This document shows positions 1,318-59,624 of a stretch of 64,000 nucleotides of DNA, piece by piece. The DNA lies in IMG/VR virus record IMGVR_UViG_3300008261_000001, positions 124,001-188,000 of that record. One strand, 5' to 3'. Each line of letters starts with the position of its first letter. Position 1 is the stretch's first letter. A program made the translations under genes and the position numbers. The notes beneath the pieces are model-generated. The model saw only the letters and a list, made by a program, of their open reading frames with translations. It did no database searches and had not been told where the DNA came from.

Positions 1318-2391
1318 TTATAAACCCTTTGCCCCAATCCTTACATACCCACGCCTAGAACCTAACTCCCAATCACTACTTCTTAACAAGAGCTTCTTCG
1401 CACTACCTCGCCCCAAAAATACCACCTGCTTAGTCGTGTTGTTCCTTAAGTCTACACTCGCACTCTTAAACTCATAACCCAACCTCAACTTGTCCAAGTA
1501 CTCCCCACGAGCCACCGACACAACATCACCACTTGGACTCACCAACAACACCGGCTTATCCGACCACGACTTCACCTGCCCTTCCGACTTCACTTGCTTT
1601 ACTCCCTCTAGATTGGAAATCACATCGTAGTTCACCCTCTCAAGTCCATAATGCGTCCCAAACTGAAAACCATGCTCCACCACCAAGTGCTTCACCACAT
1701 CATGCTGTCCACAGCTATACACACCTATGTCCGAGCGGTAAATGTTCACCACCCCCTTCGAACATAAAGACCAACCTAATCGAAAATAATCGGATAACTC
1801 ATCTCGGTTAATGGATAAAACCACTCCGTTTTTCTCTATCCTTATTGGCTTAACCATGTTGCTCCTTCTAAGGTTCTCTCTCCTAGAAGCACAGCGAAAC
1901 CTACCCCTCAACCACTCCATGAAAATCGGGTCCCTGAGCTTAATCTTATAGGCTTCTATCCTTTTAACAGCTACGGAACCTTGCCTAGACAAGAGTACTT
2001 TTGCTCGATACTTGTTGTCTGCCCATAAAGACTTTCCAATTTGCCTAGACCGCTCTATGTTGCTTGGGTTTTTGTAAAATGCCCGCATAAAGGAAGAAGA
2101 AACCCCACGCCCACCCGCGTCCATGTTCAAACACAAAAGGTCGTGTTCCGCACCACCTATGTACTTCTCACCTATAAGCTCTCTCTCATAGGCATAGGCT
2201 TCGCTCTCATCCTCGAAGTCCTTTAAGATTTCTTTCTCAAAGTCCTGTGGGTGAGCCCTGTACTTACGCAAGAATAGAATACCAGACCCAAGATACCTCG
2301 AACCATCTGGGTCTTTAGACGAGTAAGTACCCTTGCCTATGTAGTACTCCCCCGTAACCTTGTTTAACTGCCGATACACATACGATGCCAT
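1318..2391 (-). CDS. GIY-YIG homing endonuclease (Seg-like, free-standing)
   Basis: YVYRQLNKVTGEYYIGKG...RYLGSG...AYAYERELI...LNM motifs; start moved to ATG 2391 behind GGGAG. Confidence 0.8.
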   Translation of the reverse strand: MASYVYRQLNKVTGEYYIGKGTYSSKDPDGSRYLGSGILFLRKYRAHPQDFEKEILKDFEDESEAYAYERELIGEKYIGGAEHDLLCLNMDAGGRGVSSSFMRAFYKNPSNIERSRQIGKSLWADNKYRAKVLLSRQGSVAVKRIEAYKIKLRDPIFMEWLRGRFRCASRRENLRRSNMVKPIRIEKNGVVLSINRDELSDYFRLGWSLCSKGVVNIYRSDIGVYSCGQHDVVKHLVVEHGFQFGTHYGLERVNYDVISNLEGVKQVKSEGQVKSWSDKPVLLVSPSGDVVSVARGEYLDKLRLGYEFKSASVDLRNNTTKQVVFLGRGSAKKLLLRSSDWELGSRRGYVRIGAKGL

Positions 2392-2475
2392 TAAAGCTCC
2401 CTTCAAAGTAGTTCTTGAAGGGTAGCATATACAAACACCTCAGTCAAATAATACCTCTGTCAAAATAACCCTATT

Positions 2476-3447
2476 TTACGACACTTCTGACCAATCCCAA
2501 TCCCCTGTTAACCCGTTAGCAGAGTAGTCGCTCACCGTGCCTTCAAAGAAGTTCTTGAAGGAGTCTCCGCTAATGATCCAATCGAGCCAAGAGATGGGGT
2601 TATCTTTTTGCTTAAAGATGGGTTTAAGACCAAGCTGTAGGAGTCGTCTATCAGCGAGGTAGCGGATGTAGGTCTTGATGTCTTTAGAGGTGAGGTCGTT
2701 GATGGCACCGTCTTTTGGAAAGACGAGGTCAACGAGAGCGTCTTCGAGTTCGACTGCCTTTTCGTAGTTGGTGTAGATGTACGACTTGAGGTCGTCACGC
2801 ACAACGCGGGGAAACTGCTCAATGTAGGCGTGAAAGAGCTTGGTCATGCCCTCTACATGAAGGGTTTCATCACGGATGGACCATTCCACGATTTCGCACA
2901 TACCCTTCATCTTTCCAAAACGCTGATAGTTAAGGAGCATGACGAAGGCAGAGAACAAGCTCATGCCCTCATTACAGACGGAGCGGGCAAGCTCAAAGGC
3001 GAGGTGGGTAGCCTTACCGAGACCCTCAGGAGCTTGGGTCATAAACTCGATCTTTTCCCGCATCTGCTGAAACTCAAGGAAAGCTGAGTACTCGCTCTCA
3101 GCCAAACCAAGCGTATCGTTCAGTAAAGCGTAAGCCCGCTGATGCGTCCCCTCACGATTGGCGAAGGATAACAACATATTTCGGATTTCGTTGTTCTTGA
3201 ACGCCTTGATGAAGATGTCGCAGTAGTTGCCACCTACAGCCACATCGGACTGAGTAAATATCCTCAGTATCTGAGTGATGTGTTCTTTCTCAGTGGGGGA
3301 AATGACCCCACCTTTCCATTGGTTCACATCGTCTTGTAGCTTGGCTTCCCAAGAACCCCAATGGATTTTCTCATGTTCTTCCGCAGCTTGCATAGCCCAC
3401 GGATAGGTGAAGGGCTTATAAGTCTTACTTGGATCTACGAGGCTCAT
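2476..3447 (-). CDS. nrdB: Ribonucleotide reductase class Ia beta subunit
   Basis: YKPFTYPW, FTQSD, EGTHQRAY, EGMSLFSAF, WSIRDETLH, NFFEGTVSDY; start at 3447 after GGAG. Confidence 0.95.
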   Translation of the reverse strand: MSLVDPSKTYKPFTYPWAMQAAEEHEKIHWGSWEAKLQDDVNQWKGGVISPTEKEHITQILRIFTQSDVAVGGNYCDIFIKAFKNNEIRNMLLSFANREGTHQRAYALLNDTLGLAESEYSAFLEFQQMREKIEFMTQAPEGLGKATHLAFELARSVCNEGMSLFSAFVMLLNYQRFGKMKGMCEIVEWSIRDETLHVEGMTKLFHAYIEQFPRVVRDDLKSYIYTNYEKAVELEDALVDLVFPKDGAINDLTSKDIKTYIRYLADRRLLQLGLKPIFKQKDNPISWLDWIISGDSFKNFFEGTVSDYSANGLTGDWDWSEVS

Positions 3448-3567
3448 ATATGTCTCCGATAGGATAGAGGGGGGAGTACCATACCCTCCCCTATCTATGA
3501 GAGACACCTATACAAGATCTAGTTGCGTTTTACTAACGCAGACCCACTTAACGCTCCCTTGTTCTCT

Positions 3568-3747
3568 CTAGAGCCCTATCCTCTTTCCCAACGGGATCAG
3601 CATCCCCTTGTATTGCTTTTTCTCCGTTGGGGAGAGAGTCATGAAGATAGCCGAGGCTTCAGAGTAAAGGGCTACAGCCTCCCCTAGCTTGCCTTGATCC
3701 ATAGCGTCTATGCCGTCTAGGATTAACAATAAAAGTTTCTTAGTCAT
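3568..3747 (-). CDS. Small hypothetical protein (59 aa, MTKKLLLLILDGIDAM...)
   Basis: Own translation; start overlaps the end of the upstream ORF; below ORF-track cutoff. Confidence 0.5.
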   Translation of the reverse strand: MTKKLLLLILDGIDAMDQGKLGEAVALYSEASAIFMTLSPTEKKQYKGMLIPLGKRIGL

Positions 3748-3925
3748 CGTGAAGTGCTTCCTCTCTCTTGTCGTATGCCCACAACCAGTCTTCTCTGGAG
3801 GGGGCTTGTTTCATGGTGTCGCTGAACTCAGCGAGCGTCTTATCGAAATCGCTACCCGTCACAGCGAAGTATGTGAGGGTTATGGCGAGGTTCTCGATCT
3901 TTTGTCTAAAGGCTTGCTTATCCAT
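3740..3925 (-). CDS. Hypothetical protein
   Basis: 61-aa ORF with AGGAG RBS. Confidence 0.65.
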   Translation of the reverse strand: MDKQAFRQKIENLAITLTYFAVTGSDFDKTLAEFSDTMKQAPSREDWLWAYDKREEALHDD

Positions 3926-3999
3926 TTTTTTGGTTCTCCTTGTGTAGTTGTTTTTTCAGCGACATTGAGGGACTATCTACCCTATTCTCCACACGCTAG

Positions 4000-4401
4000 T
4001 TAGGAGAGGGCTGATAGATAAAAATACTTATTGTAGTTAAGGGCTGAGACAGGGACACGCTGTACGAGGGTGAACTGACACTCCTCGAAGAGCTTGAGGT
4101 CAAACTCGGTTGCGTTTCGGCTCGCGGTCGAGGGTAGCATAACAACCACAGCGTCCCAATCCTTGAGGGTCACAAACCCTCCCTTACACTCGGTGGTGGT
4201 CAAACCTTTAGCGAGGGCGGCGGTGGACGGATGAGCGGGATTGATAGCGTTCTCAAGAACGCCCTTCTCCTCCGCAAGAGCGATGACCTCCTTCGCTTGG
4301 TCCGCTGTGAGGTCTTGGAAGTGGGCGAACCCCTCGCCCTCGATCATGCGGTTGGTGAAGGCGGAGCTGAGAACAATGCGGTTGGTAGGGAACTTGATCA
4401 T
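4000..4401 (-). CDS. DUF1874 (STIV B116 / AcrIII-1 ring nuclease)-like protein, divergent
   Basis: RIVLSSAFTNRMI ~ family YLxNAFSxNML; ENAINPAHPSTAALA ~ SAIGHxSTAxL; VTLKDWDAVVV ~ IKLxxGDxLxV; right size; AAGGA RBS. Confidence 0.6.
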   Translation of the reverse strand: MIKFPTNRIVLSSAFTNRMIEGEGFAHFQDLTADQAKEVIALAEEKGVLENAINPAHPSTAALAKGLTTTECKGGFVTLKDWDAVVVMLPSTASRNATEFDLKLFEECQFTLVQRVPVSALNYNKYFYLSALS

Positions 4402-4447
4402 GTATGTGTCCTTCGGAGTGTGTTGGTTCTGTCGCTGTCCCCCCTAC

Positions 4448-4544
4448 TAATGAGCTAGTTCCCCACTTGGGATAAAAATGAGAAAAAAATCTTTTTTTGA
4501 AAAACCTTTCCACTTTTTATCCCAAGTGGGGAACTAGCTCATTA
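4448..4544. promoter_or_regulatory. Perfect 31-bp inverted repeat made of two divergent TATCCCAA-N12-CTCATTA promoter-like elements
   Basis: 4448-4478 TAATGAGCTAGTTCCCCACTTGGGATAAAAA is the reverse complement of 4514-4544; faces genes 4401(-) and 4583(+). Confidence 0.8.
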
Positions 4545-4582
4545 ATGGGTGCGTACACACCCACACAGCTAAGGAGTCCCGC

Positions 4583-4822
4583 ATGGGCTACTACGAGCTT
4601 CAGCAGACCACCAACGACTTTGTCCTCGACACCGCCATGTCCCTCGACGATAAGCCCCTCACGGAAGCACAGCTCACCAAGCTCGTCAACACCTATATCC
4701 GCAAGGTTGCCCGTACTAAGGAGGGCAAGCTCGACCTCGCTGATGTCCTCGGGCTCAAGAAGGTGGAGAACATCCTCCCCTCCCTCGTCCGTCGGGTGAA
4801 GAACACTCAGAAGATCAAGTAA
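4583..4822 (+). CDS. Hypothetical protein (TATCCCAA-motif gene)
   Basis: 79 aa, AAGGAG RBS, C-ending codon bias. Confidence 0.75.
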   Translation: MGYYELQQTTNDFVLDTAMSLDDKPLTEAQLTKLVNTYIRKVARTKEGKLDLADVLGLKKVENILPSLVRRVKNTQKIK

Positions 4823-4840
4823 GACCCACCCCCACTCCGC

Positions 4841-7516
4841 TCACCCCTGACAGCTAAGGCACTCGTCTACTTCTTTAAGTGCCTTACGCTCGACCTTTTG
4901 GGAGACTTTATCTGCCACCACACCTGCTGAGGTACGGAGGTAATAGAGTCCCTTAAGTCCCTTCTTCCAAGCGGACAAGTGAACAGCGTTGACATAGTTC
5001 ACATCTGACCCTGCTGGAAAGAACAAGTTGACGCTCTGACCTTGACATATCCATTCTTGGCGGACAGAGGCGTGTTCGACTATCCACATTTGGTCTAGCT
5101 CGAACGCGGTCTTAAATACCTGCTTGTCGTGGTCGGTTAAGAAATCCAAGTGCTGTACGCTCCCTTGTTTAAGGATAACAGATTGGATAGTTTCATTGAG
5201 CCAACCATCGGGATTCTCTTGGGATAAGCTGTGAGTTTTTAGTTTATCCAATAGGTATTTATTCACCTGTAGGAAAGAACCTGCCCTAGTTCTATGGGTA
5301 AAGGCGTTGGACTTCCACGGCTCAATAGAGGGTGAAGTATCCAAAATGATGGCGGAGTTAGCGTTGGGGGCGATGGCGAGGAGGTGCGAGTTCCTCATGC
5401 CTGTGCCGATGCCGTCTAGGTACTCACCTTTAAGCTGTGCTAGACGCTGAGAAGAAGCGACCGACTTATCTTTTATGTGGTTAAAGATTTTCCTATTGGC
5501 GATGGTAGCCCAGAGGGACTCGAAGGCGATGTTTTTCTTTTGTAGATAGGAGTGGAAGCCCATAGTGCCGAGTCCAAGCGACCGCTCGTGTTTAGCCGAG
5601 TAAATAGCTTTGGATAACTTAGCGGGTGCATGGTCTATGAAGTACTGAAGCACATCGTCTAGGAACTCAACCAAGTCCTCAACGATGGTGGTGTTTTCCC
5701 ACTCGTCAAAGTACTCTAAGTTTAGGCTGGAGAGACAACAGACAGCGGAGCGGTCTTTGGCTGTGGGAAGATGGATCTCGTTGCAGTTTCCTGTGAGAAC
5801 CCCATTGAAAACACCCATATGTCGTAGGGGCTCGTTAAAACAATAGGTGTCTGCATAACCGTTTTCAGTCACACTCTCGATCTTGACGAAGCGAGAGGCA
5901 GAGCGGGAGGGTGTATGTTGTTCGATGGTGAGTCGGTGTGTCTTCAGTCCAAGATTGAGGAGCTTTTGTGTGTCTACGGAGTTAATAAGGATACGCCACG
6001 CTTCACGACACCTATAAACGCCTCCGCCTCTGACTCCGAAGTCGATGTTCCTCTCGCCTGCGAAGTGGGAAATCTTCGGTTGTACACCAAGAGTGTTGAG
6101 CATGAGGCTCAAGTCGGTCAAGAAACCCCTATTTGTGGACACTAGCTGTAGTGACTGATTTTTACCATTTCTTGACACACAACCGTCAGCGTCTAAGAGA
6201 CCAGAGAGCCAATCCATTCTCGTCTTGAGAGATAGGTTCAAAGGCACCTGAAACTTGGGCTTAATGTCTGATTTTGGATATTTCACAACGAGTCGGTTTT
6301 GATCCTCGTTTCTGTAAACCTTAGCCTGTGGGGTAATCAACTTATCCAATAAGGAGGTCTTTGCTCCATAAAGATAAGTGATGGGTTGCTTCACTTGGTT
6401 GTATGTCCCGTCTCCTGTGAAAAATCCGCAAGCATAAGCATTTTCCCAATAGCCTTGTCCATCGACTGTAGGTAAATCAAACTTCAGTAGCTTGAGTCCG
6501 CTCTTGAGGTCTTTTGCTTCAAGGACTCTCTCATTTTCGTCATAAAACTTGTGATAAGGGGTTGTATTAAGGGTGACTCCATTAGTGAGTTTCACCTCCA
6601 AAATCTGTTGGTTTTCACCCGTCTTTAAGATCCGAGTTTGAGACCAAGTCTTTCCATTCCAAACCTCCACCTCACGCCCCACTAGAGACTCAATCGGAAA
6701 GTATCCATTTTTCGTTAAGATTTGTGTGTCGCCTCTAACGCACAGATTAGAGCCGTGTATTTCTAACCCTTTGTCTTTGAGGGCTTGGGGTAAATGGCGA
6801 TTAGCCGTATCTATGAAGTTCAAGTAAGGCTCACCTGTACGAAACCTTACCTCTAAGATTCTCTGCCAAAGGCTACGGGCATCTAGGGTGTCCCTCACCT
6901 CTTTGCTCTTAGGGTCGATCAAGTCCCATGTGCCTCCCTTGAACACCGCCTCCATGAACTTATCCGTGATGTTGATGGCGTTGTTGAGGGTGAAGCACTT
7001 TCTGTTCGTATCTCCACCTGTGGGGACACGGATATTTAAGAACTCTACGATGTCGGGGTGGGACACCTCCAAATAAGCCGCATACGAGCCTTTACGGGTT
7101 GAACCTTGCTTATAAGCACCCATGTCGGCATCGACCGTCTTTAGAAAGGGAATGGGTCCAGGGGCTTTATTGGATACCGAGCGTATATTTGACCAATGTC
7201 CACCTACACCACCACCCAAGACGCTCATCCACCGCAGTTCTTCGGAGTGAGAAATCAACCCCTCGATGGTGTCGTCCACATAGGTGAGAAAACAAGAGAT
7301 GGGCATCCCTTGTCCCTCAGCGTTGGATAAGATGGGTGAGGAGAACATGAACCAACCTTTAGAGGCGTAGTCGAATATCCTCTGAGCTAGTTCTTTGTTG
7401 GGCGTGTACGCATAAGCGGCTCTCTTAAAAGCGTCTAGGGGAGAGCTGTCTTCTCCCTTTAGGTAGTAGCTCTCTAATAAAGACTTGGCGTGGTCTGAAA
7501 AATGGAAACTATCCAT
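4841..7516 (-). CDS. nrdA: Ribonucleotide reductase class Ia alpha subunit (no ATP cone), intein-containing
   Basis: FSSPILSN, PISCF, GGGVG, GEPY, GSNL/CNEI, VCCLSSLNL, AIAPNANS, QGQSVNL, KGLYYLR, C-terminal CLSCQG. Confidence 0.96.
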   Translation of the reverse strand: MDSFHFSDHAKSLLESYYLKGEDSSPLDAFKRAAYAYTPNKELAQRIFDYASKGWFMFSSPILSNAEGQGMPISCFLTYVDDTIEGLISHSEELRWMSVLGGGVGGHWSNIRSVSNKAPGPIPFLKTVDADMGAYKQGSTRKGSYAAYLEVSHPDIVEFLNIRVPTGGDTNRKCFTLNNAINITDKFMEAVFKGGTWDLIDPKSKEVRDTLDARSLWQRILEVRFRTGEPYLNFIDTANRHLPQALKDKGLEIHGSNLCVRGDTQILTKNGYFPIESLVGREVEVWNGKTWSQTRILKTGENQQILEVKLTNGVTLNTTPYHKFYDENERVLEAKDLKSGLKLLKFDLPTVDGQGYWENAYACGFFTGDGTYNQVKQPITYLYGAKTSLLDKLITPQAKVYRNEDQNRLVVKYPKSDIKPKFQVPLNLSLKTRMDWLSGLLDADGCVSRNGKNQSLQLVSTNRGFLTDLSLMLNTLGVQPKISHFAGERNIDFGVRGGGVYRCREAWRILINSVDTQKLLNLGLKTHRLTIEQHTPSRSASRFVKIESVTENGYADTYCFNEPLRHMGVFNGVLTGNCNEIHLPTAKDRSAVCCLSSLNLEYFDEWENTTIVEDLVEFLDDVLQYFIDHAPAKLSKAIYSAKHERSLGLGTMGFHSYLQKKNIAFESLWATIANRKIFNHIKDKSVASSQRLAQLKGEYLDGIGTGMRNSHLLAIAPNANSAIILDTSPSIEPWKSNAFTHRTRAGSFLQVNKYLLDKLKTHSLSQENPDGWLNETIQSVILKQGSVQHLDFLTDHDKQVFKTAFELDQMWIVEHASVRQEWICQGQSVNLFFPAGSDVNYVNAVHLSAWKKGLKGLYYLRTSAGVVADKVSQKVERKALKEVDECLSCQG
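5786..6742 (-). mobile_element. Intein with LAGLIDADG endonuclease (319 aa) at the catalytic SNL/C site of NrdA
   Basis: Begins CVRGDTQILT, has TTPYHKF, GFFTGDG and LSGLLDADG, ends DTYCFNEP..GVLTGN followed by C+1. Confidence 0.92.
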
Positions 7517-16074: not shown

Positions 16075-17385
16075 TTATAAGAGGTCGGCAGTAATATCGG
16101 AGAGGGTGGAGCGTTCGGATTTGTGGAGGCTAACACAGCCGAATATGGACTGCCCTCTCATTTTTTCAATGACATAGGTGAAGCCGTTGGAGCGTTCGGT
16201 GAGGTAGGGGTGGTCGATTTGGCTTGGGTCACCAAGCAGAACGACTTTGGTTCCTTCAGCGGCACGGGTAATGATGCTTTTGATTTCGTGTTTGGTGAGG
16301 TTCTGAGCCTCGTCGATGATCATGAAGGCGTTTTTGAGTGATCTGCCTCGGATGGAGTTTATGGGTTGGATTTCTATCCTATTTTTCTCTAAGAACGACT
16401 CTTTATTGTCTGAGCCGAGGGGTGTGGTGTCCCACATGGGGTTTATTTGGTCTAGGTTGTCGAAGAAGCTCTGCATCCACGGCTCCATTTTTTCGGATAG
16501 GGATCCAGGTAGGAAGCCTATGCCATTGCCGACATCCACAACGGGTTTGGATAAGACGACTCTGTGGTAGAGGTTGGACTGATGGATAGCGGAGGCTAGG
16601 GCGAGATAGGTCTTACCTGTACCTGCTTTTCCAACAAGGGCAACGAGTTGAACATCTTTATCTAATAAGAGGTCGAGTGCGGCTCTTTGTTCCATATTGC
16701 GGGGTTTGATTTCTTTGGTGCGTGTTTTTTCTTTGTCGATGGGGTAGAGGGTTCCCTCTTTGTGCTGAAACAGGTGTTGTTTATTGTTGAAGTCGTTGAA
16801 CCACACATACTGATTTTCGTAAAAGTGTTCGTAGGAAAAGTCAGCGGGGAGGCGTGTTGCACCTTTCCAATAGGACTCTTTGAGTTCTGCCTCTAGGTGC
16901 ATATCAGGAAAGAACTCTTTAATGGCTACGGACTCTAGGGTGTTATTCGAGCCTGTGTCGGAGGTGAAGTCCTCGTTCTTGATATTTACACAGCCCGCGA
17001 GGATACGGAGGTTAACATCTTTGGAGATGAGGGTTAGATCGTAGGTTTTGTTGTGGTGTATAGCGGTTTGTAGGATAAGGAGGTCGAGGTATCTGATTTT
17101 AGACGCTTGGTCGAGAGCCTTGAGGTTAAGTTCACCTTCGTTGGCGATGACGATGATTTCTTTTGTGGCTTGCATCTCTAGGATAAGTTTTGAGGCTTGG
17201 CGGGCGAGGTGAGCCACATGGGTTTTGTCTTGGCGTGTGGAGTCTTTTAGTACATCAAGCTCCATAATGACGAAGATGGGGATGAGAACTTGGGTGTTAG
17301 GTGGGAAGGACTGCACCGAGAGTGGGTCGTAGATAAGAACCGATGTGTCAAGGATAACAGCTTTGGGTAGGTGGCTAGAGGTCAT
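16075..17385 (-). CDS. phoH: PhoH-family ATPase with N-terminal PIN domain
   Basis: ILDTSVLIYDP, ISKDVNLRI, GKAGTGKT, IGFLPG, IRGRSL, IIDEAQN, GDPSQID, SERS. Confidence 0.93.
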   Translation of the reverse strand: MTSSHLPKAVILDTSVLIYDPLSVQSFPPNTQVLIPIFVIMELDVLKDSTRQDKTHVAHLARQASKLILEMQATKEIIVIANEGELNLKALDQASKIRYLDLLILQTAIHHNKTYDLTLISKDVNLRILAGCVNIKNEDFTSDTGSNNTLESVAIKEFFPDMHLEAELKESYWKGATRLPADFSYEHFYENQYVWFNDFNNKQHLFQHKEGTLYPIDKEKTRTKEIKPRNMEQRAALDLLLDKDVQLVALVGKAGTGKTYLALASAIHQSNLYHRVVLSKPVVDVGNGIGFLPGSLSEKMEPWMQSFFDNLDQINPMWDTTPLGSDNKESFLEKNRIEIQPINSIRGRSLKNAFMIIDEAQNLTKHEIKSIITRAAEGTKVVLLGDPSQIDHPYLTERSNGFTYVIEKMRGQSIFGCVSLHKSERSTLSDITADLL

Positions 17386-17524: not shown

Positions 17525-18130
17525 ATGTCTATTGCACCTTCAGCGGAAAAGGTGGCGAAGCAGTATTTATCCAAAACTGCATCTGAACCTAAGGGTAAGG
17601 GTATTGGAAAGACAGCGGGTGAGGTTAGGTTCATTAAAGACCACGGAGACGACTCGTCTGCGTGGGCGTGGGGGCAACACCCACCTAGTCAGAGAACAAT
17701 GGATAAAAACCATCAGTTCAATAAGAGGTGTAGTAAGGACATGGCTAGAGTTCTGAGGGCGACTTTATCCGCACTTGGTCATGCCATGAGTGCCTACAGT
17801 GTGTTTGCTAAGATTAAGAGCCGAGACATAAGTCCCGATGGGAACTTGGGTGGTCGAGGCTACATAATGGAAATCAAGGGTATGCGTAGGCAATACATGA
17901 ACATCGTGGAGGCTCTCTCCGCCTTATCCGATACGCTGTATGACGAAATGACAGCGGATCATTGGAAAGAGGTACAGGAGAAGATGGTTCAGAAGGTCAT
18001 GCAAGATATTGAGGAAATAAAGGATGACCCAGAGGGTTGGGCTATTCAAGAAGAGACTGAGACCGATGAAGAGGGGTTGCGTAGAGATTTAACCTCGCCT
18101 AGAGACGATGAGGAGATGCCAAATGAGTAA
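17525..18130 (+). CDS. Hypothetical protein, probable virion head component
   Basis: AAGGAG RBS; KVA/KTA motifs near N-terminus; first gene of the plus-strand head block. Confidence 0.7.
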   Translation: MSIAPSAEKVAKQYLSKTASEPKGKGIGKTAGEVRFIKDHGDDSSAWAWGQHPPSQRTMDKNHQFNKRCSKDMARVLRATLSALGHAMSAYSVFAKIKSRDISPDGNLGGRGYIMEIKGMRRQYMNIVEALSALSDTLYDEMTADHWKEVQEKMVQKVMQDIEEIKDDPEGWAIQEETETDEEGLRRDLTSPRDDEEMPNE

Positions 18131-20498
18131 GACTAAAACCGCTACAAGTTATCTCCCAAATGGGGGGTATTCACTTGAACATGGCTCTAACTATATGTTG
18201 GACGGTTTTCAGTTCGATACCGAGTATGGAGCTGGTCCATACGAAAAGGCTCGTCTGCCCGAGGCAAAAGGTTTATCCTCTTTGCCTAGTGGGATGATTC
18301 CTATGGATAGCTCAGGTGAGTCCTCTTTACCCGATGGGGTGGAGGTGGATTTGCAGTTAGACCTAGAGGAGATGACTAAGGATGCGAGTCAGAATATCGC
18401 TCTTGTAGATCACTCTTGGCTTGCTACACAGTCTGAGCCTGATTTGTCTGGGCAGAGGTCACTTGAGGATATTTACGAGCATTTGGCGAAGGGGCGTTTT
18501 GAGAACCCTGAGGTGAATCAGTTCAAAAATCTTCAAGACGCTTGGGGAACTGAGAGCACTACGGGTTTGGACATAATCCCTAATACTCAACGCCACCACG
18601 AAAAGTACAAGAACACCTATGAGGGCGTATCCAAAGTCCCTGGTGATGATGAGCGTCAAGAACTAGAGAAAATCCGTAGGAAGCTCGCCTATGGCGAACC
18701 TCTATCTCTTATCCTAAAAGAAGCCTCTGACCCTTTATCCATTAAGGGAGTTGTAGAGGCTGATTATGGATTATCGGGGAGGGTGTACATCAAGGAAGCC
18801 CATTTCCCTGGGTTGTTCAACGGTCGTTGGAACGAAGTCCTCACTAATAGGTGCAAGACAGCGATGTACATTGTGTCTGCACATAAGGATTGTGCGTTCG
18901 ATAGATTTTTGGGTATGGAGGTGGTGAAGTCTGTTAAGGATATTCCGTGGAGGAAGGTAGCCTCTGCTTTATTGCCGAGATTGGAAACTTACGGCATCCG
19001 AGTAGCGTCCGAGGTAAGCGATAAAGATAGAGTGCGTCTTGCCTTCATAGACTTGATTGAGGGCAGAGTAGCTCGTCATGAACCAGCTCAGTCTTGGTTC
19101 CCCACCCAGCGTGACGACACCGCTTTGATTTCTTTGGATCATGCAAGGAGGAAGCTCGAAGCCTCTCAAGTAGAACACACTTTCATAGCCTCTCAAGAGG
19201 TGGTGGAAGAGGGTAAAATCGCCAAGAGGCTTGATAGGATATCCAAGCAGATTGTCGAGCAAGGTTTATTGGATAAAGAGATAGTGGAGTCAGTTGTAGG
19301 TACAAATAAGACTGCACAACAAAAAATAGACAGACTGTATCAGTTATCCGCACAATCTTTAAACCCTGTTGTGGGTGACTATAAGGGTCAAGGTGTTGGA
19401 TTGACCGCGACCTCGACGAAGGTGTCTTCTTTTACAGAGGCGGATAGGCAGTCTTTAAGAGAAGCATCCGCTAGGGGAGATACACAGAGGAATACTAAGG
19501 CGATGGAGAAGATAGCACTTCTCATCAAGGCTGGGTTGATTACACACGACGAGGTTGCCGTGGCTATTAAGGGGGTGAAAGATCCTGATGGCAGAGTGGC
19601 GAGTGTATGCTCTTACATTGCCAAACCAAAAGTCGTGGGGACATATAACGACTACGACCTCAAAGAACACCGCATGGTGAAGCACTCCAAGAAGTTGGAT
19701 GAGCTTCCAGATATGGAAAAGAGGGCGAGTGCTAATCTATGGCGTGAGGCTCATGCTAAGGTGGATCAGCTTCTCAAGAGTGGTTTACTGAGCAAGCACG
19801 ACTTCGACTCTATCCAATCCATAGGTGACGCTAATGCGTATGTAAAGAAGGCATTTGACTTAGCTTCCAAGCCCTCAAGCGTGTCTACCTATGAGGGAAC
19901 AGAGACAGCCCACATCATCACCAAAAAGACATCGGATAAGTTATCCGATACGGAGTTAAAGGTGGCGACTTGGTTGCGTCAAAAGATGAGCGAGGGGTCG
20001 GCAGGTCAAGAACTCGATGTGTTGTTGAAGAGCAGATTCTCTGAGAAGGTATTGGATACTTACGGCACAAAGATAGCTTCTCTTAGGTCACAACACGAGG
20101 GTTTAGCGGGTCACGCTTATGTAGACGCAGGTGCTTACGCCACCGAGGGAGCCGATGGTTGTGAGAAGGGTGCTTTGCTCCACAGGGCGAATCAAGTACC
20201 TGTGGTGCTGATGGTGGATAAGTGTGCGTCTTGTGTGTTCAATGTGGAGGGTACTTGCCAAAAGTACAATAAGGCTCTCATTACCTCTCCTGTAGAGATA
20301 ATCGAGGACTTATCCGATTATCAGCGTGAGAACATACGGCTTGCGAACGGCACAGACGCGGACAGAACGGCTTCCCTTTTCGTGAACGACTATGATCCTG
20401 ATGAGTTTGGACTACTTACGCCCGACCAAGTAGAAATATCGGACGAAGTATCCAATAAGGCATTGGGGGATGTGTTGTTCGGTGGCTTTGAGGTCTAA
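18123..20498 (+). CDS. Large hypothetical protein, probable head component with internal repeats and Cys cluster
   Basis: Start MSKTKTA after AGGAG; repeats GLSGRVYI/GLAGHAYV and LIKAGLI/LLKSGLL; CxxC..C near C-terminus. Confidence 0.7.
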   Translation: MSKTKTATSYLPNGGYSLEHGSNYMLDGFQFDTEYGAGPYEKARLPEAKGLSSLPSGMIPMDSSGESSLPDGVEVDLQLDLEEMTKDASQNIALVDHSWLATQSEPDLSGQRSLEDIYEHLAKGRFENPEVNQFKNLQDAWGTESTTGLDIIPNTQRHHEKYKNTYEGVSKVPGDDERQELEKIRRKLAYGEPLSLILKEASDPLSIKGVVEADYGLSGRVYIKEAHFPGLFNGRWNEVLTNRCKTAMYIVSAHKDCAFDRFLGMEVVKSVKDIPWRKVASALLPRLETYGIRVASEVSDKDRVRLAFIDLIEGRVARHEPAQSWFPTQRDDTALISLDHARRKLEASQVEHTFIASQEVVEEGKIAKRLDRISKQIVEQGLLDKEIVESVVGTNKTAQQKIDRLYQLSAQSLNPVVGDYKGQGVGLTATSTKVSSFTEADRQSLREASARGDTQRNTKAMEKIALLIKAGLITHDEVAVAIKGVKDPDGRVASVCSYIAKPKVVGTYNDYDLKEHRMVKHSKKLDELPDMEKRASANLWREAHAKVDQLLKSGLLSKHDFDSIQSIGDANAYVKKAFDLASKPSSVSTYEGTETAHIITKKTSDKLSDTELKVATWLRQKMSEGSAGQELDVLLKSRFSEKVLDTYGTKIASLRSQHEGLAGHAYVDAGAYATEGADGCEKGALLHRANQVPVVLMVDKCASCVFNVEGTCQKYNKALITSPVEIIEDLSDYQRENIRLANGTDADRTASLFVNDYDPDEFGLLTPDQVEISDEVSNKALGDVLFGGFEV

Positions 20499-21909: not shown

Positions 21910-23766
21910 ATGAGTTTATCTTCAGTAGCAATAGCTGCCAGTGCTAAGGCAGGTAAACAATCTGAACACAATGCGGATATTATTGAGTTTGTCGAAGCCT
22001 CTTGGGGGCTGAAGATGACTCTTTTCCCTGTGCAGAAGGTTATCCTAAAAGCCCACTATGGGTTAGAGTTGGACGACACCAAGAAGTTTACGATTACCGA
22101 TTGGAGGAGACAGAACGCCCGTCATGTCACTGAAAAGGAGTACTTAAAAATCCTCTTTGAAGAGGGTAGATGCAACATAGGAGAGGTCATCCCTGGCAAA
22201 CAAAGGCGAGAGATGATTTTGTCCATAGGTCGTAGATCTGGTAAGACGACTATTTCCGCGTGTATAGCCGCTTACGAGACATACAAGCTCATTAAGAAGG
22301 GCGACCCTCAGAGATATTATGGGTTGCCCGCCTCTAACAATATACAGATTATTTCTGTGGCTACGGATAAAGACCAAGCTGGATTACTTTATCAAGAGGT
22401 GTCAGGACACTATCGCAACTGCTCGTTCTTTGGTCCATACACAGCGAATAACACCCTAAGCTACGCTCGTTTCCAAACACCTGCGGATGTGGACAAATAC
22501 GGAAGGTACTTGGACGATCCTTCTGCTAAAGCCACTCTGAAAGTGACTTTTAGGTCGTGTGTGGCGAAGGGTCTTCGTGGTGCAGGTAATATCTGTGTGA
22601 TACTCGACGAGGTGGCTCACTTTACGGATAAAGGTCAGTCAGGTGCAGAGGAGGTGTACAACGCGGTAGTACCTTCTACTTCTGCATATTCACCCAAAGA
22701 TCCCGTAAATCCCACTAAACCTATCGGTGAGGTGGAGGGTCGAGTTATCCTTATTTCTTCACCTTTAGGGAAGCAAGGGCTGTTTTACAATCTGTTTCAG
22801 ATAGGTATGCAAGGTGGTGCTGCTTCGGATAATATTCTAGCTGTGCAAGCTCCTACATGGGAGGTGAACCCTACGGTACCTGCGAGCGAGTTCGAAAAGC
22901 ATTACCTCAAAAATGCCACCGTGTTCTTTACAGAGTATGGAGGCGAGTTTACGGATAGAACTCGTGGTTGGTTGGAGTCGGCAGAAGACCTTTATGCGTG
23001 TGTAGATCCTAAACTAAAGCCCTCTACTTCCGCACCAGCTAGGAAACCCCACTACATGGGCATCGACTTGGGTTTGGTAGGGGACGCAAGTGCTATAGCT
23101 ATTGGACACCTAGAGGGTGATAAGATAGTGTTGGACTTGGTAGATCAGATTAAAGCAGGCGAGGGTAAGTACAAGGACAAGGAACGCTTGGACTTTGATG
23201 AGGTGGCGGATTGGATACATGGATGGAGTAAGAAGTTTTACATATCCGAGGCTATCTTCGACCAATGGGTGGGCATCCCTCTACAGCAAGCCCTAGAAAA
23301 GAGGGGTCTGAAACAGATGGTGTCGGTTAATATGACAAAGCAGTTAACCTCACAGATGTTCCAAAACTTTAAGGATATGATGTGGGACAGCAGACTGAAA
23401 CTCTACGACAAGCCAAACCCAGAAGTTAACGGTCATGAGCCTTATCTCTTAGAGTTGTTGGAGCTACAAGCGACTGTACACTCTAAGAACATAATCTCAG
23501 TCGAAGCACCCCAAGTAGCTGGCAAGCACGACGATATGTCGGATGCCCTTGTGCGTATGATATGGGTAGCTTCTAACCATATAGGCACACAGAAGCATTT
23601 CGCCATATCAGGCGGATCTTATAGACACCCCTTAGCGGCGGGTTCTAAGGTACTAGCCCAAGCGAGCTATGTGAGAGGTGGTAGCGATGAGAGGCGTATG
23701 GCACCTAAAGCACCTCGTCCAACATTGAGGGACGCTATCAATAAACGCTTTGGTGGCGGTGTTTAA
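21910..23766 (+). CDS. terL: Terminase large subunit
   Basis: GRRSGKT, VILDEVAHF, LISSPLG, YMGIDLG, HDDMSDA. Confidence 0.92.
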   Translation: MSLSSVAIAASAKAGKQSEHNADIIEFVEASWGLKMTLFPVQKVILKAHYGLELDDTKKFTITDWRRQNARHVTEKEYLKILFEEGRCNIGEVIPGKQRREMILSIGRRSGKTTISACIAAYETYKLIKKGDPQRYYGLPASNNIQIISVATDKDQAGLLYQEVSGHYRNCSFFGPYTANNTLSYARFQTPADVDKYGRYLDDPSAKATLKVTFRSCVAKGLRGAGNICVILDEVAHFTDKGQSGAEEVYNAVVPSTSAYSPKDPVNPTKPIGEVEGRVILISSPLGKQGLFYNLFQIGMQGGAASDNILAVQAPTWEVNPTVPASEFEKHYLKNATVFFTEYGGEFTDRTRGWLESAEDLYACVDPKLKPSTSAPARKPHYMGIDLGLVGDASAIAIGHLEGDKIVLDLVDQIKAGEGKYKDKERLDFDEVADWIHGWSKKFYISEAIFDQWVGIPLQQALEKRGLKQMVSVNMTKQLTSQMFQNFKDMMWDSRLKLYDKPNPEVNGHEPYLLELLELQATVHSKNIISVEAPQVAGKHDDMSDALVRMIWVASNHIGTQKHFAISGGSYRHPLAAGSKVLAQASYVRGGSDERRMAPKAPRPTLRDAINKRFGGGV

Positions 23767-23819: not shown

Positions 23820-24071
23820 ATGACCGAGCCCATTTATCCAAAGAGTCGTAAGAGGGCGGACTACAGGGTGATAGCGAGGATCTTGGAGTTAAGCCACGGT
23901 CAGAACCACCCAAGTGATGACTTGCTAGAGGAGATTTCCATTTTCTACAAGAGCAAGGGGGGGACTTGGGTAAAGTTTTTTGAGGGTAATCCGGATCATA
24001 ATAAGTTATTAAAAGCAGCGATCTCGTTTATAATGAAGCAAAAGAAGGAGCTGTATGATAGACGACAATGA
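23820..24071 (+). CDS. Hypothetical protein
   Basis: 83 aa, GGGAG RBS, between terL and portal. Confidence 0.65.
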   Translation: MTEPIYPKSRKRADYRVIARILELSHGQNHPSDDLLEEISIFYKSKGGTWVKFFEGNPDHNKLLKAAISFIMKQKKELYDRRQ

Positions 24072-25740
24072 TGAGATGGGTAAGCCTGTAGCCGAGATTA
24101 AACAGAAATCTAAGGTGAGCACGAGGAAGTTGTCTCCAACGGAGATGAAGTCCCGTGTTAAGGTCGCTATGACCACAGGCGGTTCGATGATGGGTAGCGG
24201 TGGAAACTTCTACTCACCTGAACTATCCACAGATTTCTTAGAGCTACCCCAAAGCCAAGACGAGCAAAGGAACTACTTTAGGTTCTTTTATCGCACGGAT
24301 CCCTTTGTGGGGCAAGCGGTGGACTTACACACAGAGTTGCCGTTATCCAAAATCCGCTTGGGGTTGCCCAAAGCTAAAAATAGGGATATGGCTTATGAGG
24401 CGTTGCGGTTTTGTGAGAAGTGGTCGAAGCGTGTGGGTTTGCTTCATAGGCTCATAGAGATACTGCACGAGTACAACCTTTTGGGTGAGGTGTTTGTTTT
24501 CTGTGAAGACAATAACCCCGATATGCCCAAGACGGTCACACACAAGAAGATCAATAAGCTCACTCGTGAAGGGGAAGCGATTGAGGATTGGGAGGAGTAC
24601 GAGGACTCTCTAGATAGAGCTTACAAGTGGCTTAAAAAGAACTATAAGGGTTGGACAAGCCTAAAGGTATTGCCACCCGAACAAGTACATATGGAGACTT
24701 TTCCATTTACATCCGAAAAGATCGTGGAACTGATTCCAGACTCCAAGACAAAGGCGGTGGTGGAGCGAGCTTCCATGCAAGACCCCTCTGCAATGAGGGT
24801 CGTAGAGTCAATGCCTTCTGATGTAGTGGAGGCACTAAGGGAGGGTCGCAACATCCCCTTAAACACAGATCCAGATGCTGGTAGCTTTGTGTACTTCATG
24901 GCTCGTAAGAAGTCTCAGTATGAGCCAAGAGGTCACTCTATCCTAGAACGCTGTCTGCGTATCCTTATTTACAGGGATAAGCTGAGGCAAGCCCAGACCT
25001 CGATAGCGTCTAGACACATGACACCCATACGCCTTGTCTATGCGGAAGACATGGACGCGGCTGATGTCGAGGCGTTGCGTGACCAAGTGGACTTAGCTCT
25101 GCAAGACCCAGATTACTCGATCATTGCTAACTTCCAAGTGTCTTGGGAGGAGATGGGTGCTGATTCGCGTCTATTGGACTTGAGCGGTGAGTACGATATG
25201 ACGGATAGACAAATGTACGCGGGCTTAGGCGTGACTGAGTCTCTGTTGTCGGGCGAGTCTAGCTACTCAGGCGATAGGATAAACCTAGAGGTCATTAACA
25301 CACGCTATATGCTCATGCGTGAAGTGCTTCAAGAGATGGTGGAGGAAAATATCCTAAAGCCCATGTGTAAGCGTATGGGCTTCATAGAGGAAGACGAGGA
25401 CGGAGAAGAGGTAGTCGTTCACCCAACCTTGAGCTTTACTCGCTTAGGGTTGAGGGATAACCAAGACACCTTTGACGCTCTCTTTAATCTCTATCAGAAG
25501 GGTTCTTTGGACATCGACATCATCTTGGAGTTGTTGAACATAGACCCACAGACGACCAAAGCGAAGCTAGAGAGGGATATGTTCACGCTGAACGACTCTC
25601 AGTTCAACGAGGTGTTGAGGGGCATTTATGGAGATGCAGGGTCTAAGCTGGCTGAAAACTCTGACGCGATAGAGCGTATCGCTAGAAATCTAGGTTTGAA
25701 GTACACACCTCCAGCGGATGAAGATGGCGGTCGGTTCTAA
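24055..25740 (+). CDS. Portal protein
   Basis: 561 aa after terL; FYRTDPFVGQAVDLHTELPLSK, RGHSILERC, GLGV..SLLSGESSYS. Confidence 0.8.
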   Translation: MIDDNDEMGKPVAEIKQKSKVSTRKLSPTEMKSRVKVAMTTGGSMMGSGGNFYSPELSTDFLELPQSQDEQRNYFRFFYRTDPFVGQAVDLHTELPLSKIRLGLPKAKNRDMAYEALRFCEKWSKRVGLLHRLIEILHEYNLLGEVFVFCEDNNPDMPKTVTHKKINKLTREGEAIEDWEEYEDSLDRAYKWLKKNYKGWTSLKVLPPEQVHMETFPFTSEKIVELIPDSKTKAVVERASMQDPSAMRVVESMPSDVVEALREGRNIPLNTDPDAGSFVYFMARKKSQYEPRGHSILERCLRILIYRDKLRQAQTSIASRHMTPIRLVYAEDMDAADVEALRDQVDLALQDPDYSIIANFQVSWEEMGADSRLLDLSGEYDMTDRQMYAGLGVTESLLSGESSYSGDRINLEVINTRYMLMREVLQEMVEENILKPMCKRMGFIEEDEDGEEVVVHPTLSFTRLGLRDNQDTFDALFNLYQKGSLDIDIILELLNIDPQTTKAKLERDMFTLNDSQFNEVLRGIYGDAGSKLAENSDAIERIARNLGLKYTPPADEDGGRF

Positions 25741-59146: not shown

Positions 59147-59221
59147 GCTCCCATCGTCTAGTCTGGCCTAGGACGCAGGACTTTCACTCCTGTAACACGG
59201 GTTCAAATCCCGTTGGGAGTA
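59147..59221 (+). tRNA. tRNA-Glu (TTC)
   Basis: GCTCCCA/TGGGAGT acceptor, CAGGA-CTTTCAC-TCCTG, GGTTCAAATCC. Confidence 0.92.
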
Positions 59222-59230
59222 CTCTCAACC

Positions 59231-59265
59231 GAACCCCCACTTAGCTCACCCCTAAGTGGGGGTTT
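59231..59265 (+). terminator. Hairpin after tRNA-Glu
   Basis: AACCCCCACTTAG...CTAAGTGGGGGTT. Confidence 0.6.
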
Positions 59266-59287
59266 CTCATTTAAGGGGTACACAAAG

Positions 59288-59485: not shown

Positions 59486-59624
59486 GCTCTTATAATGGAT
59501 ACCGAACGGAGGTGTCCAAGTATGAACGGAAACTTTAACTTTATGGTGTTCTACGCGGTGGTTTCTTTGCTTGTGTGGTTCTTTTGTGCGGACTATGAGT
59601 TCATAGCGTTTATGATATGCTTAC

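What the first reader, a model, noticed from the sequence alone, without database searches (positions are those of the whole stretch)
4000..4401. Divergent AcrIII-1 (DUF1874) ring-nuclease-like gene between nrdA and nrdB
By eye the 133-aa protein aligns along its length with DUF1874 (SIRV1 gp29/STIV B116 as I recall them): LSSAFTNRMI, NAINPAHPSTAALA (His retained, but the GH motif becomes NPAH), VTLKDWDAVVV, CQFTLV. Known: AcrIII-1 degrades cyclic tetra-adenylate and blocks type III CRISPR signalling. The family NR arginine appears replaced (KGG), so specificity may differ or it may only bind the signal. It lies behind the TATCCCAA motif, consistent with early anti-defence expression.
Basis: partly seen in the sequence, partly recalled or inferred. 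Interest (0 to 1): 0.68.

Follow-up and report, generated by a model that had tools for sequence, protein, structure and literature searches.

The report
Divergent DUF1874 (AcrIII-1-like) phage protein
[quoted passage not shown] It keeps that enzyme's fold, dimer and catalytic histidine but has lost an arginine the known enzymes need, so it may act differently.

Summary
The ORF is real: window 4000-4401, minus strand, 133 aa, with a Shine-Dalgarno site. It lies between nrdB and an intein-bearing nrdA.

No library names it. Pfam, PHROGs and NCBIfam give nothing, and the Pfam DUF1874 model does not match at E <= 10.

Homology to DUF1874 is nevertheless firm:
- Profile-profile comparison gives 97.4% probability (E 1e-11).
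- The AlphaFold model (pLDDT 88.5) matches only DUF1874 structures: STIV B116 at Z 14.4, AcrIII-1 and Crn2 at Z 12.5-12.9, and the next fold at Z 2.5.
- A predicted homodimer (0.55 against 0.00 for controls) uses the same strand and loop as solved DUF1874 dimers.

The catalytic His and the Ser-Thr after it are kept (H57, S59, T60). So is an Arg...Glu pair in the lid loop (R95, E99).

The arginine and asparagine that hold the scissile phosphate are Gly and Ser throughout this family, and GH has become NPxH.

The family is rare: 23 clusters among 1.84 billion proteins. It was found only on aquatic phage contigs, never in the cellular genomes scanned.

A bipartite promoter-like motif (29 copies in the genome) ends 45 nt upstream of the start codon.

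Best reading: a cyclic-oligoadenylate ring nuclease or binder that counters host signalling. Activity, substrate, timing and host are untested.

The parts
4000..4401 (-). CDS of the 133-aa DUF1874-fold protein (P0001); stop codon at 4000-4002
   Evidence: ORF and translation. There are 22 homologues. AF2 model pLDDT 88.5. DUF1874 structures are the only strong fold matches. hhalign 97.4%.
4409..4414 (-). Shine-Dalgarno-like GAAGGA, 7 nt before the ATG
   Evidence: Read directly from the sequence.
4447..4474 (-). Bipartite promoter-like motif (TATCCCAA, 12-13 nt, YYATTAG) that ends 45 nt before the start codon
   Evidence: TATCCCAA occurs 14 times in the window against 2.2 expected. The full bipartite form has 29 copies in the 290-kb genome; 25 of them have an ORF start within 150 nt downstream, at 4-72 nt.
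4518..4545 (+). Mirror copy of the same motif, facing the divergent 79-aa ORF (4583-4822, +). The two copies form a roughly 33-bp inverted repeat around an A/T-rich centre.
3740..3925 (-). 61-aa ORF directly downstream, same strand; probably co-transcribed; no family match
   Evidence: No terminator-like site on the minus strand between 3400 and 4000. Not conserved next to the homologues.
3568..3747 (-). 59-aa ORF, same strand, overlapping the 61-aa ORF by 8 nt and followed by nrdB; no family match

Best explanation
The gene encodes a homodimeric protein of the DUF1874 (AcrIII-1/Crn2) fold. It belongs to a small sister family that the Pfam model does not reach. By analogy with the solved relatives, the two subunits pair through strand beta2 (residues 22-30) and the beta1-beta2 loop (A14-R18). 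This forms a cradle into which a two-fold symmetric cyclic oligoadenylate, most likely cA4, binds. H57, on the N-P-x-H-x-S-T loop, would protonate the leaving group. S59 and T60 would contact the ligand. The mobile lid (residues 90-101), with R95 and E99, would close over it. The result would be removal of the second messenger made by a host type III CRISPR (or similar) system, protecting the phage. SHOWN: the ORF, its conservation, the fold, the predicted dimer mode, which residues are kept and which are lost, and the promoter-like motif. INFERRED: ligand binding, cleavage, the identity of the ligand, the counter-defence role and the time of expression.
For: Fold: the AF2 model has pLDDT 88.5 and pTM 0.82. 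All Foldseek PDB hits at E <= 0.001 are DUF1874 entries (2j85, 6scf, 2x4i, 8y7f/g, 2j6b). VIA-align gives Z 14.4 (rmsd 2.1 A over 108 residues) to B116, 12.9 to Csx1-Crn2 and 12.5 to AcrIII-1; the next fold scores Z 2.5. BFVD gives the same families. Sequence: the A1 profile's best PDB hit is B116 (E 0.067). hhalign of A1 against a DUF1874 alignment gives 92.7%, and the wider alignment A3 gives 97.4%, E 1.2e-11. Residues: H57, S59 and T60 align with H47, S49 and T50 of SIRV1 gp29. H47 is the general acid (H47A loses more than 2500-fold activity) and S49 and T50 contact cA4 (10.1101/778746). H57, R95 and G74/G75 are at least 90% conserved, and P90 and E99 are invariant, across the wide family. 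Dimer: ipSAE 0.55 against a best control of 0.00. That mark was reached by 20 of 30 proteins solved as pairs and by 1 of 23 solved as single chains. The runs agree in at least 67% of contacts and the partner pLDDT is at least 78. The interface is residues 14-18, 20, 22-30, 87, 89, 111 and 113. This matches the beta2-beta2 and beta1-beta2-loop contacts described for AFV3-109 and B116 (PMC1796864). Distribution: only phage contigs were found, none in 185,579 species genomes by pattern scan, and there is no conserved neighbouring gene. This fits a stand-alone phage factor like AcrIII-1. In three of four other samples the same gene has Q at codon 89, the counterpart of the cA4-contacting Q81.
Against: R66 (R514 in Crn2) and N8 (N451) stabilise the scissile phosphate. 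R514A and N451A markedly reduce Crn2 activity (PMC11317161). Here they are G74 and S13, in every member of the family. R66 is present in all 11 diverse true DUF1874 proteins aligned. The lid motif R-L-x-E-G is not reproduced: hhalign stops before it, and the Arg-Glu spacing is 4 residues rather than 3. The window's own copy also lacks the Arg before the His (A56) that most kin have, and it has L89 instead of Q. The Pfam model does not match. The host is unknown, so a type III CRISPR target is not shown. There is no RNA evidence. In its native virus, the DUF1874 protein SIRV2 gp37 is a middle/late product with no Acr effect (10.1101/2023.01.10.523387).
Confidence: 0.45

Rival explanations
1. 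The fold and pocket are the same but the chemistry or target differs. The family may bind a cyclic nucleotide without cutting it (a sponge). Or it may cut a signal other than cA4, such as cA6, cA3 or a CBASS-type nucleotide, because the phosphate-clamping Arg and Asn are gone and two glycines open the floor of the site.
For: R66 to G74 and N8 to S13 hold throughout the family, and G74/G75 are nearly invariant, which argues for selection rather than decay. R514A and N451A cripple Crn2. In AFV3-109 the arginine equivalent to R66 hydrogen-bonds the carbonyl of the glycine of the GH motif (PMC1796864). The two motif changes (GH to NPxH, NR to GG) therefore touch each other and look like a coordinated remodelling of the site. 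The field expects viral enzymes for cA3 and cA6 but has not found them in this fold (PMC8284326).
Against: The general-acid His is at least 90% conserved, which a pure sponge would not need. The lid Arg and Glu are conserved.
Confidence: 0.27
2. The DUF1874 fold is used for something unrelated to cyclic nucleotides. Candidates are binding and inhibiting a host protein (as SIRV2 gp37 does with a lysine methyltransferase), binding nucleic acid, or an accessory role in the replication and nucleotide-metabolism module.
For: In this phage the gene sits between nrdA and nrdB. In the marine kin it sits back-to-back with DNA polymerase A, so it is always in the replication module. SIRV2 gp37 has no Acr effect natively and binds SiL_1451. 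Many archaeal-virus homologues lie outside anti-defence islands. Two catalytic-site residues are lost.
Against: The most conserved positions are exactly the cradle-lining loops (AFS motif, NPxHxST, lid R/E), not a surface patch. The gp37 partner is restricted to Crenarchaeota. There is no conserved neighbour that would suggest a partner.
Confidence: 0.2
3. It is a chance ORF or a decayed remnant, and the resemblance is spurious.
For: No curated family matches. The ESM Atlas single-sequence model is poor, with pLDDT 0.34.
Against: Full-length homologues exist on many independent contigs and in at least 14 studies. There are 25 invariant columns. No indels or stops were listed in the ORF in other samples. 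The alignment-based model is confident, and its DUF1874 matches are strong and specific.
Confidence: 0.01

Closest known systems
AcrIII-1 / viral ring nuclease (SIRV1 gp29, PDB 6scf and 2x4i; STIV B116, 2j85; AFV3-109, 2j6b); Pfam PF08960 DUF1874
   Same: It has the same fold over residues 7-116 (Z 11.4-14.4). The predicted dyad dimer forms through beta2 and the beta1-beta2 loop in the same way. The N-terminal L-x-x-A/T-F-S/T-x-x-M motif is shared. The catalytic His followed by x-S-T, and the Asp after beta4, are shared. The lid loop has similar length and carries a conserved Arg and Glu. It is a stand-alone small phage gene.
   Different: There is no Pfam match. G-H is replaced by N-P-x-H, an insertion. 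N-R (R66) is replaced by G-G. N8 is replaced by Ser. The lid motif is S/N-R-x-G/A-x-E instead of R-L-x-E-G. The alpha3 helix is shorter, and this copy has an extra low-confidence C-terminal helix. Identity is about 20%. It occurs in aquatic jumbo phages rather than archaeal viruses or phages of Firmicutes, Fusobacteria and cyanobacteria.
Crn2 (cellular DUF1874 ring nuclease; Marinitoga Csx1-Crn2, PDB 8y7f/8y7g)
   Same: It matches the fold at Z 12.9. H495 and probably E536 have counterparts here (H57, E99).
   Different: Crn2 is CRISPR-associated or fused to Csx1; this family was found only on phage contigs. R514 and N451, which Crn2 needs for activity, are absent here.
Other phage counter-measures against nucleotide signalling (sponges such as Tad1, Tad2 and Acb2; nucleases such as Acb1)
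   Same: The proposed biological logic is the same: remove or sequester a host second messenger.
   Different: The fold is unrelated. No such structure appears among the Foldseek hits at E <= 0.001. This comparison rests on general knowledge only and was not tested further.

Membership tests
DUF1874 / AcrIII-1 / Crn2 (Pfam PF08960) | Match to the Pfam PF08960 profile at or above its curated cut-off (26 bits) | tested here: not met
   hmmscan of P0001 at E <= 10 lists only a chance 'tify' hit. A six-frame search of the whole phage genome with PF08960 gives 0 matches at E <= 10. None of 22 wide-family members matches at E <= 1.
DUF1874 / AcrIII-1 / Crn2 | The DUF1874 fold: a five-stranded mixed sheet with helices on one face | tested here: met
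   AF2 model pLDDT 88.5. Foldseek E 3e-7 with TM 0.70/0.79 to 2j85. Z 14.4, 12.9, 12.8, 12.5 and 11.4 to five DUF1874 entries, with the next fold at 2.5.
DUF1874 / AcrIII-1 / Crn2 | Detectable sequence homology by profile-profile comparison | tested here: met
   hhalign of A3 against A2 gives 97.4%, E 1.2e-11 over 85 columns. A1 against A2 gives 92.7%.
DUF1874 / AcrIII-1 / Crn2 | Dyad homodimer through beta2-beta2 pairing and the beta1-beta2 loop, forming the ligand cradle | tested here: met
   This is a prediction only. ipSAE is 0.55 against a best control of 0.00. The mark was reached by 20 of 30 solved pairs and 1 of 23 single chains. Contacts agree at 67% or more and pLDDT is 78 or more. 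Contacts are 26:26, 16:16, 22-30 and 14-18. The mode is as described in PMC1796864. The pass may partly reflect the model's memory of solved relatives.
DUF1874 / AcrIII-1 / Crn2 | Catalytic His (gp29 H47) followed by x-S/T-T in the beta3-alpha2 loop | tested here: met
   H57, S59 and T60 align with H47, S49 and T50. H57 is invariant in A1 and at least 90% conserved in A3.
DUF1874 / AcrIII-1 / Crn2 | Gly directly before the His (G-H) | tested here: not met
   The motif is N-P-x-H, with N54 and P55 nearly invariant, against G-H in 10 of 11 true members aligned and S-H in one.
DUF1874 / AcrIII-1 / Crn2 | Arg that holds the scissile phosphate (gp29 R66 = Crn2 R514) | tested here: not met
   G74 aligns with R66. 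G74/G75 are at least 90% conserved in the family. The Arg is present in all 11 diverse DUF1874 proteins aligned. R514A markedly lowers activity.
DUF1874 / AcrIII-1 / Crn2 | Asn of the N-A-F-S motif (gp29 N8 = Crn2 N451) | tested here: not met
   S13 stands in its place and is invariant in A1.
DUF1874 / AcrIII-1 / Crn2 | Lid loop with Arg and Glu (gp29 R85 and E88, motif R-L-x-E-G) | tested here: inconclusive
   A 12-residue loop (90-101) lies at the same place in the fold. R95 is at least 90% conserved and E99 is invariant. However, the motif and spacing differ, hhalign ends before it, and MAFFT offsets the Arg by two residues.
DUF1874 / AcrIII-1 / Crn2 | Metal-independent cleavage of cA4 to A2>P | not testable with these tools
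   This needs biochemistry. cA4 is not among the ligands offered for co-folding.
Anti-CRISPR (functional class) | Expressed early enough, in a host with a cA4-signalling type III system, to block it | not testable with these tools
   The host is unknown. No RNA run holds the locus. A promoter-like motif is present but its class is unknown.
CARF / SAVED-type ring nucleases (Crn1, Csx15 etc.) | Rossmann-like CARF or SAVED sensor fold | tested here: not met
   The best hit outside DUF1874 in the second look is cA6-bound Cam1 (8t66), at Z 2.5 only.

The most novel reading that the evidence does not exclude
This family is the first DUF1874-fold protein with a remodelled active site (GH to NPxH, NR to GG, N to S). 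It would recognise or destroy a signal other than cA4, for example cA6, cA3 or a CBASS-type nucleotide, or act as a His-containing sponge. That would give aquatic jumbo phages a counter-defence of new specificity.
Probability: 0.2. Interest if true: 0.72.

Novelty: new variant of a known kind. Interest (0 to 1): 0.48.

Why it matters
AcrIII-1 is the model enzyme for viral destruction of a prokaryotic immune messenger, and its known members are recognised through one Pfam model. This gene shows that a sister family exists which that model misses. It is confined, so far, to large aquatic phages. It has the same fold and His, but the residues that clamp the scissile phosphate are systematically replaced.

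If it is active on cA4, it shows that the catalytic requirements of this fold are looser than mutagenesis of Crn2 suggests, and it widens surveys of anti-type III genes. If it has another substrate or only binds, it is a new specificity in a fold so far known only for cA4. Either outcome can be tested with a 133-aa protein and commercial cyclic oligoadenylates.

It also gives a hint about the unknown host of this freshwater jumbo phage, which would probably use nucleotide signalling for defence.

Tried and rejected
- **Family libraries.** Pfam, PHROGs and NCBIfam scans of the protein gave nothing usable.
- **Single-sequence PDB search.** phmmer against PDB gave only chance hits.
- **ESM Atlas.** The feature search gave no usable hit. 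The Atlas's own model is poor (pLDDT 0.34), so its structural neighbours are meaningless.
- **Reference phages.** tblastn of the protein and megablast of the locus against 50,697 phage records found no match. The RecD-like helicase finds only relatives below 40% identity, so there is no cultured relative and no host.
- **Pattern scans.** With A1, 10 viral loci were found and none in the species genomes. The genome scan used narrow patterns, so distant cellular kin are not excluded.
- **Contigs of distant family members.** Those of P0068, P0070 and P0071 are 0.6-3 kb and carry no informative neighbours.
- **Paralogue idea.** The 133-aa gene just upstream in the marine kin is not a paralogue: hhalign gives 0.1%.
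- **Conserved operon partner.** Rejected. The downstream small ORFs of the window have no counterpart beside the kin. The kin lie next to DNA polymerase A, not the nrd genes.
- **Sigma-70-type promoter.** None was found in 3400-4900.
- **Expression.** No RNA run holds the stretch, so expression timing could not be examined. The contigs laid show presence and variants only.
- **More bacterial-type DUF1874 proteins.** The word search with P0063 gave only 4 more. Diverse phage members were taken from GenBank records instead.

Full report
**1. The observation**

Window 4000-4401 (minus strand) is an ATG-started ORF of 133 codons plus stop. A GAAGGA Shine-Dalgarno site lies 7 nt before the ATG, at 4409-4414.

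The flanking genes are as stated:
- nrdB at 2476-3507(-), PF00268, E 6e-63.
- nrdA at 4841-7516(-), PF02867, E 3e-106, interrupted by an intein with a LAGLIDADG domain.

Two small ORFs of 61 and 59 aa follow the target on the same strand before nrdB. A 79-aa ORF diverges from it on the plus strand.

The window is bases 124001-188000 of a 290,179-bp virus record, estimated 93% complete, with 47.3% G+C.

**2. Is it a real gene?**

The word search found 22 full-length homologues at 43-74% identity, all unnamed. Some lie on contigs of 250-360 kb. Their alignment (A1) has 25 invariant columns, concentrated in three motifs.

The same stretch is held by freshwater, lake and drinking-water metagenomes from about 15 studies. 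I laid contigs from four of these runs on the locus:
- No indel or stop was listed inside the ORF; indels were listed only in the intergenic leaders.
- Of the 13 listed substitutions, about half are silent third-position changes.
- The replacements are F4Y, L89Q, T92Q and V116I.

Three of the four runs carry Q at codon 89, which is also the family consensus. The chance-ORF reading is rejected.

**3. What the libraries say**

Pfam, PHROGs and NCBIfam give no usable match. The Pfam DUF1874 model (PF08960) finds nothing in the whole phage genome at E <= 10, although the same search rings in its control genomes. A single-sequence search of PDB chains gives only noise. By the usual annotation criterion this protein is therefore not a DUF1874 member.

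**4. Remote homology**

- A profile of A1 against PDB sequences ranks STIV B116 first (E 0.067). It aligns L-S-S-A-F-S-N-R-M-L with L-T-N-A-F-S-I-N-M-L, and N-A-I-N-P-R-H-E-S-T with N-A-I-G-H-D-S-T.
- I took B116 and SIRV1 gp29 from their GenBank records and from the word search and built a DUF1874 alignment, A2. hhalign of A1 against A2 gives 92.7%, E 4e-7.
- The exhaustive profile search of 1.84 billion cluster representatives found only 23 clusters at E <= 0.001, so the family is rare.
- Aligning these gave A3. None of its members hits PF08960 at E <= 1. Yet A3 against A2 gives 97.4%, E 1.2e-11 over 85 columns. The more distant members have an N-terminal motif (L-S-S-T-F-S-I-N-M-L) that is almost the DUF1874 one, so they bridge the two families.

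**5. Fold**

AlphaFold2 with A1 gives a confident model: mean pLDDT 88.5 and pTM 0.82, with only the last 8 residues poor.

| Search | Result |
|---|---|
| Foldseek vs PDB | All hits at E <= 0.001 are DUF1874 entries: B116 2j85 (E 3e-7, TM 0.70/0.79, rmsd 2.1), AcrIII-1 6scf, SIRV1 ORF114 2x4i, Marinitoga Csx1-Crn2 8y7f/8y7g, AFV3-109 2j6b |
| VIA-align second look | Z 14.4 (rmsd 2.1 A, 108 residues) for B116; 12.9 for Crn2; 12.8 and 12.5 for SIRV1 gp29; 11.4 for AFV3-109; then a drop to 2.5 |
| BFVD | The same archaeal-virus proteins and the Thermoanaerobacterium phage THSA-485A homologue |

The ESM Atlas's own single-sequence model of this very protein is poor (pLDDT 0.34), which explains why the Atlas search gave nothing.

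**6. Dimer**

Two copies were co-folded. The score was 0.55 (runs 0.54-0.59) against a best control of 0.00. That mark was reached by 20 of 30 proteins solved as pairs and by 1 of 23 solved as single chains. The runs agree in at least 67% of their contacts, and the partner's pLDDT is at least 78.

The confident contacts are residues 22-30 pairing antiparallel across the dyad (26 with 26), the 14-18 loop (16 with 16), and residues 87, 89, 111 and 113.

The AFV3-109 paper describes exactly this arrangement: beta2-beta2 antiparallel pairing as the main contact, and a short antiparallel stretch of the beta1-beta2 loop, forming a ten-stranded cradle (PMC1796864). The pass may owe something to the model's memory of the solved relatives. 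It shows likeness of the interface, not binding.

**7. Active-site accounting**

For SIRV1 gp29, H47 is the general acid (H47A loses more than 2500-fold). R85 on the mobile loop 82-94 locks the closed dimer. N8, S11, N13, S49, T50, R66 and Q81 contact cA4 (10.1101/778746).

For Marinitoga Csx1-Crn2, N451 and R514 stabilise the scissile phosphate. E536 (= E88) steadies the His. N451A, H495A, R514A and E536A all markedly reduce cleavage (PMC11317161).

Using the hhalign and MAFFT alignments, the counterparts here are:

| gp29 residue | This protein | Note |
|---|---|---|
| H47 | H57 | kept |
| S49, T50 | S59, T60 | kept |
| A9, F10, M14 | A14, F15, M19 | kept |
| S11 | T16 | Ser in most kin |
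| D75 | D83 | kept |
| Q81 | L89 | Q in kin and in three of the four other runs laid |
| N8 | S13 | replaced, family-wide |
| N13 | R18 | Asn in the distant members |
| G46 | N54-P55-x | an insertion |
| R66 | G74 | G-G nearly invariant |

I aligned 11 diverse true DUF1874 proteins, taken. They come from archaeal viruses and from Fusobacterium, Thermoanaerobacterium, Synechococcus, Microcystis and Hydrogenobaculum phages. R66, R85, E88 and G89 are present in every one of them. The loss of R66 is therefore a real departure from the family, not ordinary variation.

In AFV3-109 the arginine equivalent to R66 hydrogen-bonds the carbonyl of the glycine of the G-H motif.

The lid is present: loop 90-101 lies between beta4 and a short alpha3. 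It carries R95 (at least 90% conserved) and E99 (invariant across A3). However, its motif is S/N-R-x-G/A-x-E rather than R-L-x-E-G, and the local alignments do not extend through it. The equivalence of R95 with R85 and of E99 with E88 is therefore an inference.

**8. Context and distribution**

All 10 loci found in IMG/VR are phage contigs of up to 376 kb, and none was found in 185,579 species genomes by the pattern scan.

One locus is the same phage. The other nine belong to a marine lineage (TARA samples). There the gene is divergently transcribed from DNA polymerase A and followed by unrelated small ORFs and a NUDIX gene. The nrd position is thus not conserved. The downstream small ORFs are not conserved. 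The upstream 133-aa gene of the marine phages is unrelated.

The protein therefore acts without a fixed genetic partner, as AcrIII-1 does. It does always sit at the head of a transcription unit inside the replication and nucleotide-metabolism region.

**9. The upstream motif**

TATCCCAA occurs 14 times in the window against 2.2 expected, and none of 100 shuffles reached 14. Genome-wide it is the first half of a bipartite element: TATCCCAA, then 12-13 nt, then Y-Y-A-T-T-A-G, often followed by G-rich sequence.

There are 29 copies. Twenty-five of them have an ORF start within 150 nt downstream, at distances of 4-72 nt. Most of those ORFs are small (56-200 aa), and the copies are often arranged as back-to-back divergent pairs. 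The target's copy (4447-4474, minus strand) ends 45 nt before its ATG. Its mirror copy (4518-4545, plus strand) serves the 79-aa ORF.

This behaves like a phage promoter class. No sigma-70-type site is present. The marine kin have a different conserved upstream motif.

Nothing shows that the class is early. No terminator-like site separates the target from the two small ORFs and nrdB, so the promoter may simply drive the nrdB unit. No RNA run holds the stretch.

The timing matters. SIRV2 gp37, a true DUF1874 ring nuclease, is a middle/late product and has no anti-CRISPR effect in its native infection. It also binds a host lysine methyltransferase (10.1101/2023.01.10.523387).

**10. Verdict**

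This is a remote DUF1874/AcrIII-1 homologue, established by profile, fold and predicted quaternary structure. It has the His retained and the N-R arginine lost.

I would not file it as a DUF1874 member in the annotation sense. It fails the Pfam model and three motif features. It is best described as a sister family of the same fold.

What it most likely does is bind a two-fold symmetric cyclic oligoadenylate in the dimer cradle and cleave it with H57, as a phage counter-measure. My confidence in that full chain is about 0.45. The same pocket with different chemistry or a different ligand gets about 0.27, and an unrelated use of the fold about 0.2.

The host, the substrate, the activity and the time of expression are all untested.

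Noticed in passing
window 4841-7516 (-): The nrdA large subunit is interrupted by an intein with a LAGLIDADG homing-endonuclease domain (about residues 293-549). The Ribonuc_red_lgC match is split in two.
   Followed up: partly
window 1318-2406 (-): A 362-aa ORF between nrdB and a UvrD-like helicase matches phage homing endonucleases (phrog_314, E 4e-16) but no Pfam family. It is a second mobile element in the nucleotide-metabolism cluster.
   Followed up: partly
whole genome G000; in the window e.g. 13927, 40717, 41191, 41709, 42267, 43700, 43722: A bipartite promoter-like motif (TATCCCAA, 12-13 nt, YYATTAG) has 29 copies in the 290-kb genome. Most lie 4-72 nt before ORF starts, and many are divergent back-to-back pairs. 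They cluster at genome positions 38-60 kb and 164-168 kb. The polymerase or factor that reads it is unknown.
   Followed up: partly
window 4136 (codon 89) and 4411: Three of four other freshwater samples have Q instead of L at codon 89, the counterpart of the cA4-contacting Q81. All four samples carry an extra T after 4411 in the 5' leader, so the window's record may have a one-base difference there.
   Followed up: yes
window 59147-62881: A cluster of six tRNA genes (Glu, Arg, Tyr, Gly, Val, Asn).
   Followed up: no
window 52940-57757 (+) and 16075-17385 (-): A 1605-aa protein whose last 90 residues match the phage tail-sheath C-terminal domain, and a PIN-PhoH fusion protein. Several other ORFs of 460-1060 aa (18108-20498, 21910-23766, 24055-25740, 27666-30854, 30859-32244, 45350-46744) have no Pfam match at all.
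   Followed up: no
L004, L006-L008 and L015-L023, about 60-100 nt before the homologue's start: The marine kin share a different conserved upstream element (AACCCCTTAT, then TATA, then TTATGTCATCAAC-like sequence). Each lineage appears to have its own promoter type in front of this gene. An Hc1 histone-like gene lies nearby in those phages.
   Followed up: no
BFVD hits A0A1B2IEC3, A0A1B2IEJ3, A0A1B2IEG6 and J7KCD4 (Erwinia jumbo phages Kwan and phiEaH2): Several uncharacterised proteins of Erwinia jumbo phages give weak DUF1874-like fold matches to the model (E 2e-3 to 0.2, TM 0.4-0.5). They may be further unrecognised relatives of this fold in jumbo phages.
   Followed up: no
P0069 and P0077 (hits): P0069 joins a 4HBT thioesterase-like N-terminus to the last 47 residues of this family and is probably a chimeric contig or a mis-called gene. 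P0077 (1402 aa, 20 short matched stretches) looks like a repeat-driven false hit.
   Followed up: partly
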